A stretch of DNA of 64,000 nt from Salpingoeca rosetta (Eukaryota; Protista; Choanoflagellata), in contig JAWQFM010000006.1 in the NCBI GenBank assembly GCA_033442325.1, forward strand, positions 1,806,873-1,870,872, written 5' to 3'. How positions within the stretch are numbered: the stretch's first letter is position 1; each line of letters begins with the position of its first letter. Shown here piece after piece: positions 22,931-28,250 of this stretch. Below the pieces are notes generated by a model. That model was not told the origin of the DNA. It worked only from the letters and a program-made list of their open reading frames with translations, and did not search any database. The position numbers were made by a program, and so were the translations under genes.

Positions 22931-24218
22931 TCAGATAAACTCGTTTGAGGGCGCGACAGCGATGTTGGGGATGGAAGGTGCTCGCGTCTGGATGCGTGGC
23001 GTGGCAAACGGATGCTTCAGGCACGTGCGCGTCTCCGCGTACAGCGACAGCTGTCGACTGCCACTCTCAATGACCTTGTTTGTGACCAGGCTCGCATACA
23101 GCTGCTCCACGGTGAGCCGTGGCAGTAGCATGCCCTCGTGCATGTCGTCGAGATAGAAGCGGTAGTCCGAGTCGGCGTTGTCGCGCGTGCCTTCCGGGTG
23201 AATTTCCAGCATGAGCTCGCCCAGCGTCATGGACGACGGCACATACGGCAGCTTGATGTCAATGTCACTGCCGTGCACCACGACCTCAAACATGGTGTCG
23301 GGCTTGGGTGGGGGTGGGAGCTGACGCGCCTGTGGCGCTGGCGATGCCGGCACTGGCTGCTGCTGATGCTGCGGCTGTGGCATGACTGTACACAAGAATG
23401 ACAAGAATGACAAGAACAAAGGGTCACGGCGTATGCAGCATGAGATGACGAGTACGATAGGATTGGGGCAACACGACCAGGGCCCACGATGCAAACTTGC
23501 GTTGCACCTCGCACCCCCTTCACTTACAAGTACACTGAACAGCATTTCATACGCACACACGCACGCATACACACCAGTTCATGCATTGGCTTTGACTTAC
23601 AGCCGTACGACGCTGGGCTGCGCGGGTCAGACCCGGCGTGTCCAAAAGCAATGCGCGGCGTCTGCGCTTCGCTCTCATAGTCGCTGGCATCTGGTGGTGC
23701 AAGCTGCATGCTCGAGCCAGCGCGGCCAAGCACAAAGAACGTCTTCATCTCGCCCTTGCCCTTCACGGGCACCGTGCCGCGTTTCAGAATGTTCCAATCA
23801 TCCTTGTTGGGCAGCGCCTTGATGAACGCATAGCTCACCTTGATTTGTATAGTTACGTGTGTGTGTGTCATGTGCGTGCGCCAGTGTGTGTGTGTGTGTG
23901 TGTGCATATGCAGGAGTGAGTGCGTGTGCGTGTGTGTGTGTGTTTGTGTGTGGGAGTGGGGAACGACACACCAGCGAGCCATTATGTACGCATTGGTATG
24001 ATGCGCAACACATCTCACCTGCACGGCACCGCCAACGCCAGTCGACTCCATGCGTGATGCCACGTTCACCGTGTCGCCAAACAGGCAGTAGCGCGGGCGC
24101 TCGCGGCCAACTGAACACATGGATGTTTCGTGGGCACGTGAGGTTGAAACTCCCGAGCAAATCAGATGCATACATATACATACACACATACAACGTCTGC
24201 TCAACCACCATACACGCC

Positions 24219-24300
<82 letters not shown>

Positions 24301-27148
24301 CGAGCGCATCATCATGACCACCACTACCAACACCAACACCACCAACACCAAACATCATCATCATCACCACCAAACATCACCAACACTACCCTCATCCTGA
24401 TTGTCACCACCATCCAACGCACCGACTCCTGCCATGATGCGGCCGCTGTGCATGCCGACGCGAATGTTGATTGGCTCGCCGTCCATGGGACTGATGACCG
24501 TCTCAGCGGCTGCCACCATCTCCACAGCAAAGGCAGCAATCACGTCTGCGTGGCGTGGGTCTGCCTTGGGCAGGCCTGACGCAACCTACGGTGGGCATTG
24601 GTTGAAGGCACAAGCAGCGCGGATGCATGGATGCGGTGTGAGTTAGGGTCATGTACAAGACAGCAGCTACGACAGGTTTAGAGCCACGTCACGGCAAGTC
24701 CACGCATCGTGCATGCCCGCACCACACCCAGTGAACAACACACACACACACATATCACAAAAGCTGACGCCCGCGCACCCTACACAGTAGACAATCACAC
24801 AACCCGCACACACACACACACACATGCGCACACCATGTATGCGTCGCCGATGGTTTCGACTTTGTACACGCCGTGCTTGGTGCACAGGGCATCAAACTTG
24901 GAGAAGAGCTCGTTCAGCATGTCCATCACCTGGCAATGTAACGAATGTGCGAGCGCAACCGAGTTGGAGAGCGGTGGCGGAAGACAGTGTGAGCGAGATT
25001 CGGTGCAGCGGAGTGTACGGACATGGCGCAGCAAACTGTACCAGGGTCCCATGACACGCGAACAACTGAACGTCCACATGAACAAATGTCCACATGAACA
25101 AATGTCCACATGTGCATCTATCCACACACACACACACACATATATACAAACACACAAACACACGCACCCAAACATACAGTTACACGTCCATACCTCGCGC
25201 ACGGGGACGCTTGAGGAGATCTTGGTGAAGCTGACAATGTCCGAGAAGAGGATGCTGACGGCCTCGTAATGCTCGGGCTCGGGAATCTCGCCAGCCTTAA
25301 GCGCTTGTGCAACTTGCTGTGGAGGATCGGTGGAAGTGGTCGTGCCACGCACAGTGGTGAGTGTGGTGGGAGTCCACGCAGGAAATGAAGTGCACGCACT
25401 CGCGCGCACACATGCACACGCACACACACATGCACGCTCACGTATATGCACGCACGCTCACATACGCACACTCACACATGTATGCACGCACACGCACATA
25501 AAATTACACACACTCACATACACACGCACACACACATGCACGCTCACGCACACATTTGCACACTCACATACACACGCACACACTCATGCAATCGCCCCGC
25601 GACCCTCTCCAGCACACACACACACACACACACATACACGCATGTGACAGACCGTTGGGAGGATGCTGTGCAAGAGGCCGTCAACCCGCTCCTTCTCCTT
25701 GTCGAGATCCTCCATGGCCTTGTCGAGCGAAGCCGTCGTGTTTTGTAGCGTCTGCGCCATCAGCACCGTGGCAGACTGGTGCGCCGTGCTGATGACAAGC
25801 TCCCGCCCGTTGCTGTGGATGGGGATGTCTTCCAGACAGATGTCCAGCTTCTCCATCTCCTCCAGGCTGCTGATGGTTGGAATGCACAGGAACAGCATTG
25901 CGTCGTGCTCCGGGCTGAACACAAGCTCGCCCTTGAGAAACAGGCCGTCCTTGAGGATGGTGATGCCGGAAATCGGGTCCTTCCCGCCATCGTCAGGGAA
26001 CACCCCCGGAAGCGCCGTATCGTCGTTCACACCACTCCCCTGCGCGCTCTTGTTCTTGTTCGCCTCCGCTGTATCGCTGTTGCTGCTACTGCTGCTTGTG
26101 CTGCTGCTGCCGGCGGACGTGCTCTGCGAAACAGAGTTGCCCCTGCGCCGCCGCGTTTGATTCGGCTTTGGCGTCGTGGCGCTGCCGGTGGTGCGCGCAG
26201 CAGCAGCAGCAAAGGGGCACCCGGAGGGCGGGGCTGTGCTGGCGTCGCTGCCAGGTGGAACGGCACACGCTTGCACGAGAAGCGGGCTGTGGTCAAACGA
26301 CTCCAGCAGGCTGTCAAACCCAAGGCCGCGGATGTCTGGTCGCACCACGCGCATGAGGCGGAAGAAAGGCTGGCCAACACCACCGGCAGGCAGGCGCTCC
26401 TTCAGGCGGGGGCCGACGCTGGTGATGGTGAACGTGCGATCGAACGAGATATGCCAGGGGAACACCGAATCCACCATGGACGGCCCAAAAGTCAGCTGCC
26501 CGCTGATGGCGTGCGCCTTTTCCGAGTCAAAGTACTCCTTCTCTCCATAGCCCCTGTGGGTGACCGTGATATGTATGTGTGTGTGTGTGCATGTGGTTGA
26601 TACAGTTAGCGTGCGCAGCGGAAGTGTGTGATGTGTTACGTAATGTGTGTGACGCAATGTGTGTCGGTGTGTGTGTGTGTGTGTGTGCTCCAAGTTCGTG
26701 CATAGTAGGTGCAATATGACAGGCATCACGAGCAACAACGGAAACGTCATCTCGATTCGCAGACAACGACGATTGAATCAGCAAGCAGAGCGTGCAAGGG
26801 CATGGCCAGGCAAGGGCGCATGGGAGCATCTGTTTGCTGAACGTACTCTGGCCCCATGAAGATGTGGAACACGTCGTGGTCGTGGTCCTGGCCCTTCTTC
26901 TTCACGTGCTTGAGCTCAATGTCGAGGCTGTACACCTTCTTGGCAATGTCCTTGAGCAAGGCGATGGCATAGGGGTAGATGCCCATGCGCGACGAATAGT
27001 AGTGCAGCAAGAGTGAGCCATCCTTCTGCCTGTGCGGCTTGAAGGAAGGCCCCTTCATGGACGGGTACGCGTTCACGATGTTCAAGTGCATCGAGTCCAG
27101 ATGCAGCAGCAGCTCGTAGAAGTTGTCTCCAAGACTGTTTGTATGCGT

Positions 27149-27215
<67 letters not shown>

Positions 27216-28250
27216 TGCGTGTGTGTGTGTGTGTGTGTGTGTGTGCGTAGGTATGTGTGGTGTGACATGTTGGTGGTGAAATCTACCACCTGCATTAATG
27301 GATGCGTGTCATTACCCATGCTGAAAGAAGGCAGGACAAGGAAAGTGGCGCACCTTTGGACGAGGGGCAGGTAGCCCTTCTCCACGAGCACGCCGACCTG
27401 GAAGAAACCAATCTGAGACAGGCACTCCTCCGCGTCGATGCCAAGCACCTTTGTGTGGTTGTCAAGGTCCCAAGGTGCACAGAGGGAGGGTGAAGAAAGT
27501 GAGCAGCCATACCAGTCTGGTGGTAGGTCCGGTGGAGGGCATGTGGAACAGCCGCGAGGGAGAGTGCAAAGGCGAGTGCAATGTGCTGTGGTGGCAGCTG
27601 AGCGGCGCGGCTCAAGGGTTCAGCATGATTGTCTTGAGATTGCTCGAATACCTTTGCGGCTGAGACGACCATGTTGAGGGTGTGCTCGTCCGAGTATGCA
27701 TGGTGGAAGTTGACTGCGGTGTGCGTGACGTTGGCCTCCCTGCGAATGAGGTCAAGCTTCTCCTTGCCATCTGGGAGAGACAGCACGTAGGCGTTAAGTG
27801 CCTCTTCCACAAACCCGTACCTGACAAGCACCGAGCAATGGAAAGCCACCGTAAGCAATGGAGCCAGGGTCAATGAGAGAGAGAGAGTATGTGTGTGCGT
27901 GTGAGAGTGAGAGAGTGTGTGTGTGTGTGAGAGAGAGTGAGAGAGTGTGTGTGTGTGTGAGAGAGAGAGTGTGTGTGTGTGTGCGAGAGAGAGAGAGAAG
28001 GGGGTGGTGATTGTTCGTTGGTACCACGCTTTGCAGCGTGAGGGGAAGGCAGTGAGCATGGTGTGTGAGCATGGAATGGGTGTCGTGGTTGTGTAGAGGG
28101 TGATGATCTTTCGTGACGACCCATGACATCCACAAGCTCATGATACTCTGGTTTCGACCTTCAAAGCTTCAACGAGCCTCCAACCATCACCAAACGAGCA
28201 GACCAGAGGCATGCTTGGCGAGGGGGTGGGGGATGATGGTGGTCTTACAT
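22931..28250 (-). CDS. Soluble guanylyl cyclase: H-NOX, PAS/HNOBA, coiled coil, cyclase and a C-terminal ubiquitin-like extension
   Basis: N-terminus MYGFV, proximal His in LDSMH, YxSxR heme motif [28 protein letters not shown], and cyclase motifs [54 protein letters not shown]. The last exon 23385-22931 joins in frame (GGC T|gtaagt ... tacag|TC ATG). Confidence 0.93.
24219..24301. repeat. (CAA)n/(TTG)n microsatellite in a guanylyl cyclase intron
   Basis: Direct reading; lies between the ...IMAGV and VGRERPRY exons. Confidence 0.9.

What the first reader, a model, noticed from the sequence alone, without database searches (positions are those of the whole stretch)
26960..27450. H-NOX domain with O2-sensor signature (distal Tyr plus polar residue at position 74)
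Seen: [12 protein letters not shown] puts Tyr (codon 26971-26969) six residues after the YxSxR Arg. IGFFQ puts Gln three residues after the conserved Gly71, and the proximal His (LDSMH) is intact. Known: that Tyr position is Ile145 in NO-selective mammalian beta1 but Tyr in O2-binding H-NOX proteins (Tyr140 with Asn74 in the T. tengcongensis H-NOX; atypical sGCs of C. elegans and Drosophila). Inference: an O2-regulated cyclase and a candidate sensor for aerotaxis, which has been reported in S. rosetta.
Basis: partly seen in the sequence, partly recalled or inferred. Interest (0 to 1): 0.75.

Follow-up and report, generated by a model that had tools for sequence, protein, structure and literature searches.

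The report
Choanoflagellate guanylate cyclase, polar haem pocket
This is an intact soluble guanylate cyclase gene of the choanoflagellate Salpingoeca rosetta whose haem sensor carries the tyrosine, plus a partner glutamine, that marks oxygen-binding relatives; that prediction is already published for this gene's group and remains untested.

Summary
The minus strand carries an 11-exon, roughly 873-residue soluble guanylate cyclase (H-NOX, HNOBA/coiled coil, cyclase, ubiquitin-like tail). Its H-NOX lines up with human beta1: His105, Tyr134-x-Ser136-x-Arg138, Tyr144 (codon 26971-26969) at the beta1 Ile145 column, and Gln74 (27400-27398) at the Phe74 column.

The genome is S. rosetta. It has at least 12 H-NOX loci and no NOS. 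Only three loci carry the Tyr, and all three also carry Gln74. Across 14 distinct choanoflagellate cyclases with that Tyr, 13 have Gln74. None of about 30 sequences with another residue there does. Neither do two animal cyclases with that Tyr, including a Gyc-89Db-like one.

The closest named relative is Choanoeca flexa sGC4. Reyes-Rivera et al. 2022 predicted it to bind O2 from the same tyrosine, in a survey that covered the S. rosetta genome. The O2 reading is therefore reasonable but not new, and nobody has tested it. The Tyr alone is not sufficient, because I145Y full-length sGC does not bind O2. The C. elegans GCY-35 type has its Tyr two residues earlier; this protein has a Tyr there too (Tyr142).

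The aerotaxis link is unpublished speculation with three candidate paralogues. This scan already reached the same reading on a paralogue elsewhere in the genome (s1-442171).

The parts
28249..28250 (-). Last two bases of exon 1: 'AT' of the start codon, preceded by CCACCACC and followed by donor GTAAGA. The G of ATG is the first base of exon 2.
   Evidence: Read. The orthologues begin MYGFV.
27652..27820 (-). Exon 2: H-NOX residues 1(G)-57, with Val5 and Leu9.
   Evidence: Translation. Pfam HNOB E 5.8e-8, profile 1-55. 38% identity to C. flexa sGC4.
27354..27448 (-). Exon 3: residues 58-88, with Gly71 and Gln74 (codon 27400-27398).
   Evidence: Translation. Ungapped 52% match to C. flexa sGC4 residues 60-90, Gln opposite Gln. 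Same Gly71-to-Gly82-Tyr83 spacing as beta1.
26847..27134 (-). Exon 4: residues 89-185. His105 (27088-27086), Pro118, Tyr134 (27001-26999), Ser136 (26995-26993), Arg138 (26989-26987), Tyr142 (26977-26975), Tyr144 (26971-26969).
   Evidence: Translation. Pfam HNOB E 2.6e-21. PDB alignments to beta1 and Nostoc H-NOX.
25653..26553 (-). Exon 5: HNOBA (PAS-like) domain, a low-complexity insert and the signalling coiled coil, ending ...LLHSILPT.
   Evidence: Pfam HNOBA E 1.8e-44. 44% identity to C. flexa sGC4.
25194..25316 (-). Exon 6: start of the cyclase domain, with the first metal-binding Asp (LFSDIVSFT).
   Evidence: Sequence. Pfam PF00211 on the enclosing ORF.
24834..24929 (-). Exon 7: cyclase, with [10 protein letters not shown] (guanine-specifying Glu and second metal-binding Asp).
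24423..24585 (-). Exon 8: cyclase, from VASGLP to RIMAGV.
24019..24110 (-). Exon 9: cyclase, with [19 protein letters not shown] (guanine-specifying Cys, catalytic Asn and Arg).
23601..23838 (-). Exon 10: end of the cyclase domain and a linker.
   Evidence: Close match to the C. flexa sGC4 C-terminal cyclase segment, read.
22931..23385 (-). Exon 11: Pro/Gln-rich linker and ubiquitin-like tail, stop TGA at 22933-22931.
   Evidence: 32% identity to the C. flexa sGC4 tail, E 9e-12. No Pfam family. Subject of earlier finding s1-436179.

Best explanation
The gene encodes a soluble guanylate cyclase of about 873 residues, of the choanoflagellate sGC4 type. Its N-terminal H-NOX domain should hold a b-type haem through His105, with the propionates held by Tyr134, Ser136 and Arg138. 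Unlike NO-selective beta1, the distal side of the pocket is polar. Tyr144 sits at the column of beta1 Ile145 and bacterial Tyr140. Gln74 sits at the column of bacterial Asn74. The inferred mechanism is that Tyr144, oriented by a hydrogen bond from Gln74, donates a hydrogen bond to haem-bound O2 and so stabilises a six-coordinate Fe(II)-O2 complex at ambient O2. The change in haem ligation would then pass through the HNOBA domain and coiled coil to a homodimeric, GTP-specific cyclase and change cGMP output. The sign of the response is unknown. Shown here: the gene structure, the domains, the haem-binding and catalytic residues, the column assignments, and the strict co-occurrence of Tyr and Gln. 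Inferred: haem loading, O2 binding, the Tyr-Gln hydrogen bond, homodimerisation, and any role in behaviour.
For: Domains: HNOB, HNOBA and the cyclase domain all match above Pfam cut-offs, exon by exon. All introns have GT..AG boundaries.

Column mapping: the alignment to human beta1 and Nostoc H-NOX has no gap through YxSxR and the Tyr. The single-exon paralogue L001 aligns Gln to beta1 Phe74 and Tyr to Ile145.

Literature: position 145 lies in the beta1 distal pocket, and the Drosophila-type O2 clade has Tyr there (PMC1435932). Asn74 and Trp9 hydrogen-bond Tyr140 in the O2-binding bacterial H-NOX, and residue 74 borders the distal pocket in Nostoc H-NOX (PMC7356049).

Conservation: 13 of 14 distinct choanoflagellate sequences with Tyr at Arg+6 have Gln74. 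These include the three S. rosetta genes, the M. brevicollis protein and C. flexa sGC4. None of about 30 sequences with another residue at Arg+6 has Gln74, and neither do the two animal sequences with that Tyr.

Catalysis: both metal-binding Asp, the Glu/Cys guanine pair, and the Asn and Arg are all in one chain. Beta1-type chains have Gly at the first Asp.

No NOS oxygenase domain was found in the genome, so an endogenous NO signal is unlikely.

The closest named relative, C. flexa sGC4, was predicted to bind O2.
Against: No O2-type choanoflagellate sGC has been tested. Only the NO-selective Cf-sGC1 was.

A distal Tyr is not sufficient: full-length I145Y sGC does not bind O2 (Martin et al. 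2006, as reported in PMC9592903). Two bacterial H-NOX proteins with the same ligand-contacting pocket residues differ about 1000-fold in O2 affinity (PMC7356049).

Trp9 of the bacterial triad is Leu here and is not conserved in the class.

The Tyr-Gln association may reflect one shared ancestor rather than repeated co-evolution.

The Tyr-Gln geometry was not measured. The joined protein was neither searched nor folded, and the script machine was lost.
Confidence: 0.55

Rival explanations
1. The protein senses NO from outside the cell, or CO. It excludes O2 despite the Tyr, and Tyr144 and Gln74 only tune ligand on and off rates or haem redox potential.
For: Full-length I145Y sGC stays NO-responsive and does not bind O2. 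Reyes-Rivera et al. suggest that species without NOS may detect NO from bacteria. A green-algal sGC is activated by CO (reference cited). The Trp9 member of the triad is missing.
Against: The Tyr-Gln pair is conserved between S. rosetta, M. brevicollis and C. flexa, and is absent from the nine other S. rosetta paralogues. Those nine have an apolar Phe, the pattern expected of NO-type pockets. The genome has no NOS.
Confidence: 0.28
2. It is the O2 sensor that drives S. rosetta aerotaxis. This is the reader's strong form: O2 binding changes cGMP, which changes flagellar beating or reorientation rate.
For: Aerotaxis is documented in S. rosetta and its mechanism is unknown (PMC5122458). sGCs mediate O2 behaviour in C. 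elegans. cNMP-binding domain genes exist in the genome.
Against: There are no expression, localisation or genetic data. Two further paralogues (L001 and L010) carry the same signature, so redundancy is likely. The aerotaxis paper proposes ROS and O2-sensitive channels instead. No paper in the library connects choanoflagellate aerotaxis with sGC.
Confidence: 0.15
3. It is a haem-independent or redox-sensing cyclase, or a regulatory partner in heterodimers with other paralogues. The Tyr-Gln pair would then be structural.
For: Some bacterial H-NOX proteins act haem-free as redox sensors (PMC7108781 abstract). The 12 paralogues allow many heterodimers.
Against: Every listed haem contact is kept: Val5, His105, Pro118 and YxSxR. 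All catalytic residues are in one chain.
Confidence: 0.07

Closest known systems
Choanoeca flexa soluble guanylate cyclase 4 (P0279), with the Monosiga brevicollis protein MONBRDRAFT_37136 (P0277, in the P0023 cluster)
   Same: Same architecture, including the ubiquitin-like tail. Identity to C. flexa sGC4 is 38-52% in exons 2-5 and 32% in the tail. Same Gly71-x-x-Gln74, same Tyr at Arg+6, and the same KGYLP and YPSM-x-GPSF motifs. C. flexa sGC4 was predicted to bind O2 from the Tyr.
   Different: This protein has a second Tyr (Tyr142), where C. flexa sGC4 has Ala and M. brevicollis has Arg. It also has a longer low-complexity insert in the HNOBA region. None of the three proteins has been tested.
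Animal atypical sGCs of the Drosophila Gyc-88E/89D type. These are O2-sensitive according to PMC1435932. They are represented here by a Tachypleus protein named 89Db-like (P0286) and a Seison protein (P0123).
   Same: Tyr at the beta1 Ile145 column. The haem contacts are kept.
   Different: The animal proteins have Phe at position 74, not a polar residue. They have no ubiquitin-like tail. According to Reyes-Rivera et al., choanoflagellate sGCs diversified separately from the animal paralogues. Drosophila Gyc-88E itself was not retrieved.
C. elegans GCY-35-type O2 sensors, represented by the Caenorhabditis protein P0079
   Same: sGC architecture, and a Tyr close after YxSxR. This protein's Tyr142 lies in the column of the GCY-35-type Tyr.
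   Different: The GCY-35 type has Ile at Arg+6 and Leu at 74, and the paper places its Tyr at a different column.
O2-binding bacterial H-NOX of Caldanaerobacter subterraneus (T. tengcongensis), with the Trp9/Asn74/Tyr140 triad
   Same: A Tyr at the equivalent distal column, and an amide side chain at column 74 (Gln here, Asn there).
   Different: Trp9 is Leu here. The bacterial domain is too distant to be found by sequence search from these exons, so the mapping runs through beta1 and Nostoc H-NOX and the literature. The bacterial output is a chemotaxis receptor, not a cyclase.
Mammalian NO-selective sGC beta1 (PDB 5mnw, 6jt0)
   Same: Collinear H-NOX, E 8e-16 for exon 4 alone. Same His105, YxSxR and Pro118.
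   Different: Beta1 has Phe74 and Ile145. It lacks the first metal-binding Asp and needs an alpha subunit.

Membership tests
H-NOX / HNOB domain (PF07700) | Profile match above the curated cut-off | tested here: met
   Exon 2 scores 33.3 bits and exon 4 scores 76.7 bits against a cut-off of 25.5. The genome scan hits the same place.
H-NOX / HNOB domain (PF07700) | Haem contacts: proximal His, YxS/TxR, the conserved Pro, and Ile/Val/Leu5 | tested here: met
   His105, Tyr134, Ser136, Arg138, Pro118 and Val5, read. The list of contacts comes from PMC1435932.
H-NOX / HNOB domain (PF07700) | Binds a b-type haem | not testable with these tools
   Needs purified protein.
Soluble guanylate cyclase | H-NOX, HNOBA, coiled coil and class III cyclase in one chain | tested here: met
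   Pfam matches exon by exon along one strand with GT..AG introns. The joined protein was not searched.
Soluble guanylate cyclase | GTP-specifying Glu and Cys, plus catalytic Asp, Asp, Asn and Arg | tested here: met
   [29 protein letters not shown]. All are in one chain, so a homodimer could be active.
Atypical O2-binding sGC | Tyr in the distal pocket at the beta1 Ile145 column | tested here: met
   Tyr144 lies opposite Ile145, with no gap between YxSxR and the Tyr.
Atypical O2-binding sGC | Forms a stable Fe(II)-O2 complex, with activity that depends on O2 | not testable with these tools
   Needs spectroscopy and an enzyme assay. No choanoflagellate member of this class has been tested.
Atypical O2-binding sGC | Belongs to the animal Gyc-88E/GCY clades by descent | not tested
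   No tree was built because the script machine was lost. The paper reports that sGCs diversified separately in choanoflagellates.
Bacterial O2-binding H-NOX hydrogen-bond triad (Trp9/Asn74/Tyr140) | Tyr at 140 and an amide residue at 74 | tested here: met
   Tyr144 and Gln74 (Gln instead of Asn). The mapping to the bacterial protein rests on beta1 and Nostoc numbering and the literature, not on a direct alignment.
Bacterial O2-binding H-NOX hydrogen-bond triad (Trp9/Asn74/Tyr140) | Trp at position 9 | tested here: not met
   Leu9 here. Position 9 is Thr or Ala in the paralogues and varies across the class.

The most novel reading that the evidence does not exclude
Choanoflagellates keep a class of sGC in which the distal Tyr is paired with Gln74. 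This rebuilds the core of the bacterial O2-binding hydrogen-bond network, which animal atypical sGCs lack. These enzymes would then be true O2 sensors of useful affinity. The three S. rosetta copies, including this one, would be the long-sought receptors for its aerotaxis, which would argue that O2 sensing was an early role of sGCs in the animal stem lineage.
Probability: 0.2. Interest if true: 0.65.

Novelty: new member of a known kind. Interest (0 to 1): 0.35.

Why it matters
S. rosetta swims towards oxygen, and the paper that showed this left the mechanism open. S. rosetta is a laboratory model for studying animal origins. A short list of three candidate O2-sensing cyclases, each with a defined Tyr-Gln pair to mutate, would make the question testable by knockout and by spectroscopy. 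The gain over the literature is modest. O2-type sGCs were already predicted for choanoflagellates as a class. The additions here are three. The window gene is identified as the sGC4-type copy. The Tyr is strictly paired with Gln74, a pairing absent from the animal atypical sGCs examined. Nine further paralogues have an apolar pocket, and several of them have lost the haem-propionate Arg.

Tried and rejected
(1) The script machine failed at the first call. No tree, no test of co-evolution and no joined-protein computation could be run.

(2) Exon 3 alone against PDB sequences gave only a chance repeat-protein hit. Column 74 was mapped instead through the single-exon paralogue L001 and through the fixed Gly71-to-Gly82-Tyr83 spacing.

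(3) The bacterial O2-binding H-NOX was not reached by sequence search from exon 4 or from L001. No direct alignment to Asn74 and Tyr140 was obtained.

(4) Two word searches did not return the window's own annotated product. They returned only its paralogues P0151 and P0153 and the orthologue C. flexa sGC4.

(5) Drosophila Gyc-88E itself was not retrieved. The nearest named stand-in is a Tachypleus 89Db-like protein. Huang et al. 2007 is not held.

(6) Structure prediction was not run. The tools return no coordinates or residue-level superposition, so it could not have placed Tyr144 or measured the Tyr-Gln distance.

(7) I considered that the ORF 26747-27448 was one exon and rejected it. Its middle is a translated (CA)n intron bounded by GT and AG.
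Full report
**What is there.** The region lies in a spliced gene on the minus strand. Reading the sequence and translating by reference gives 11 exons with GT..AG introns. Many of the introns are full of (CA)n.
- Exon 1 ends with AT at 28250-28249.
- Exon 2 is 27820-27652. Its first base completes the ATG.
- The remaining exons are: 3, 27448-27354; 4, 27134-26847; 5, 26553-25653; 6, 25316-25194; 7, 24929-24834; 8, 24585-24423; 9, 24110-24019; 10, 23838-23601; 11, 23385-22931.
- The product is about 873 residues.

Pfam matches, exon by exon:
- HNOB on exon 2 (E 5.8e-8) and on exon 4 (E 2.6e-21).
- HNOBA on exon 5 (E 1.8e-44).
- The cyclase domain on the ORFs holding exons 6-10.
- Nothing on the last exon.

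The joined protein was never searched, aligned or folded.

**The observation.** Exon 4 holds LDSMH (His105, 27088-27086) and [12 protein letters not shown]. Exon 3 holds IGFFQ, with Gln74 at 27400-27398. The alignment of exon 4 to human beta1 (5mnw, 6jt0) has no gap between YxSxR and the Tyr. It puts Tyr144 opposite Ile145. The printed Nostoc H-NOX alignment shows Met in that column. Exon 3 is too short to search alone. However, the paralogue L001 encodes its H-NOX in a single exon, and it aligns its Gln to beta1 Phe74 and its Tyr to Ile145. The window protein has the same 11-residue spacing from Gly71 to Gly82-Tyr83. The only corrections are that a one-residue loop deletion shifts the numbering to 144, and that the stated range includes an intron.

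**Organism and gene family.** Two paralogous loci translate exactly to NCBI proteins of Salpingoeca rosetta (P0151 and P0153). The 55.4-Mb genome has at least 12 H-NOX loci and no NOS oxygenase domain. I read the residue at Arg+6 and at column 74 in every locus.
- The window gene, L001 and L010 have Tyr with Gln.
- The other nine have Phe at Arg+6, with Phe, Ser or Val at 74.
- Most of those nine have also lost the Arg of YxSxR.

**Wider comparison.** A search of 1.84 billion representative proteins with exon 4, two word searches and cluster look-ups supplied the comparison set.
- Of 14 distinct choanoflagellate sequences with Tyr at Arg+6, 13 have Gln74. The exception, P0005, has Thr.
- None of about 30 sequences with another residue at Arg+6 has Gln74. 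This set covers the Phe class, beta1, beta2, green algae and nematodes.
- The two animal sequences with that Tyr, treated below, also lack Gln74.
- The Tyr sequences may form a single clade, so this is strict conservation. It is not proven to be repeated co-evolution.

**Closest named relative.** Choanoeca flexa soluble guanylate cyclase 4 (P0279) matches every part of the gene: exon 2 at 38%, exon 3 at 52% without gaps (Gln opposite Gln), exon 4 at 45%, exon 5 at 44% and the tail at 32%. It has the same Gln and Tyr. A Monosiga brevicollis protein has them too.

**What is known.**
- Reyes-Rivera et al. 2022 searched the S. rosetta genome among others. They predicted NO or O2 preference of choanoflagellate sGCs from the distal Tyr. 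They predicted C. flexa sGC2-4 to bind O2. They tested only the NO-selective sGC1, which did not bind O2.
- Fitzpatrick et al. 2006 report Tyr at the beta1 Ile column in the Gyc-88E/89D and GCY-31/33 clade, but at an earlier column in the GCY-35 clade.
- My data agree. A GCY-35-like protein has Tyr at Arg+4, Ile at Arg+6 and Leu74. The window protein has a Tyr at Arg+4 as well (Tyr142).
- A protein named 89Db-like and a Seison relative have Tyr at Arg+6 but Phe74. A polar residue at 74 is therefore not part of the animal pattern.
- It parallels Asn74 of the bacterial Trp9/Asn74/Tyr140 triad. Trp9 is Leu here.
- The Tyr is not sufficient for O2 binding. Full-length I145Y sGC does not bind O2. 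Bacterial H-NOX proteins whose ligand-contacting pocket residues are the same differ about 1000-fold in O2 affinity.

**Mechanism.** The cyclase part carries both metal-binding Asp, the Glu/Cys pair for guanine, and the catalytic Asn and Arg, all in one chain. Beta1-type chains have Gly at the first Asp. A homodimer could therefore be active. The best reading is a haem-loaded H-NOX in which Tyr144, positioned by Gln74, stabilises bound O2, and ligation is relayed to the cyclase. Shown here: the residues, their columns and their conservation. Inferred: O2 binding, the hydrogen bonds, the dimer state and the sign of the response. I put this at about 0.55. An NO or CO sensor that excludes O2 is the main rival, at about 0.28.

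**Aerotaxis.** S. rosetta aerotaxis is real and its mechanism is unknown. The authors suggested ROS and O2-sensitive channels, and did not mention cyclases. No paper in the library joins choanoflagellate aerotaxis and sGC. cNMP-binding genes exist in the genome. The link is an untested idea with three redundant candidates.

**Novelty.** The prediction for this class is already published. This scan had already reached the same Tyr-plus-Gln reading on a paralogue on another contig (s1-442171). The additions here are:
- the assignment of the window gene to the sGC4 type;
- the full survey of the 12 paralogues;
- the contrast with animal atypical sGCs at position 74;
- the second Tyr at the GCY-35 column.

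The finding is a new member of a known kind and of moderate interest.

Noticed in passing
L002-L009 and L012 (G000 contigs C27, C16, C5, C34, C31, C7); Nine of the 12 H-NOX paralogues have Phe at the distal column. Most have lost the Arg of YxSxR: Asn in L002, L003, L007 and L009, His in L006, Ser in L008. L012 also lacks the HYY motif. The proximal His is kept in all of them. Haem propionate binding may be altered in a large part of the family.
   Followed up: partly
window 28250-28248 and 27820: The start codon is split by intron 1. AT, in a CCACCACC-AT context, is followed by donor GTAAGA, and the G comes from exon 2. The two word searches did not return the window's own product. The M. brevicollis orthologue model P0277 starts with unrelated residues in place of the first part of the H-NOX, compared with P0023.
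   Followed up: partly
window 26977-26975: A second Tyr (Tyr142) lies two residues before Tyr144, in the column where GCY-35-type nematode cyclases have their only Tyr. The other Tyr-class choanoflagellate proteins have Trp, Arg or Ala there.
   Followed up: partly
window 22931-23385; P0002-P0009, P0151-P0154, P0023, P0279: The ubiquitin-like tail of this cyclase aligns to C. flexa sGC4 (E 9e-12). By eye, similar tails end most of the Tyr-class choanoflagellate cyclases and one Phe-class protein (P0008). It therefore seems more widespread than the three species given in earlier finding s1-436179.
   Followed up: partly
window 27135-27353, 27880-28010, 24200-24330: The introns are packed with microsatellites: (CA)n and (CT/CA)n in introns 1 and 3, and a long (GTT)n run in intron 8. 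These create long spurious ORFs on both strands.
   Followed up: no
whole genome G000: No NOS oxygenase domain (PF02898) was found in the genome that carries the 12 H-NOX cyclases. At least two loci carry cNMP-binding domains: two matches about 650 bp apart on C27 and two about 4 kb apart on C12.
   Followed up: partly
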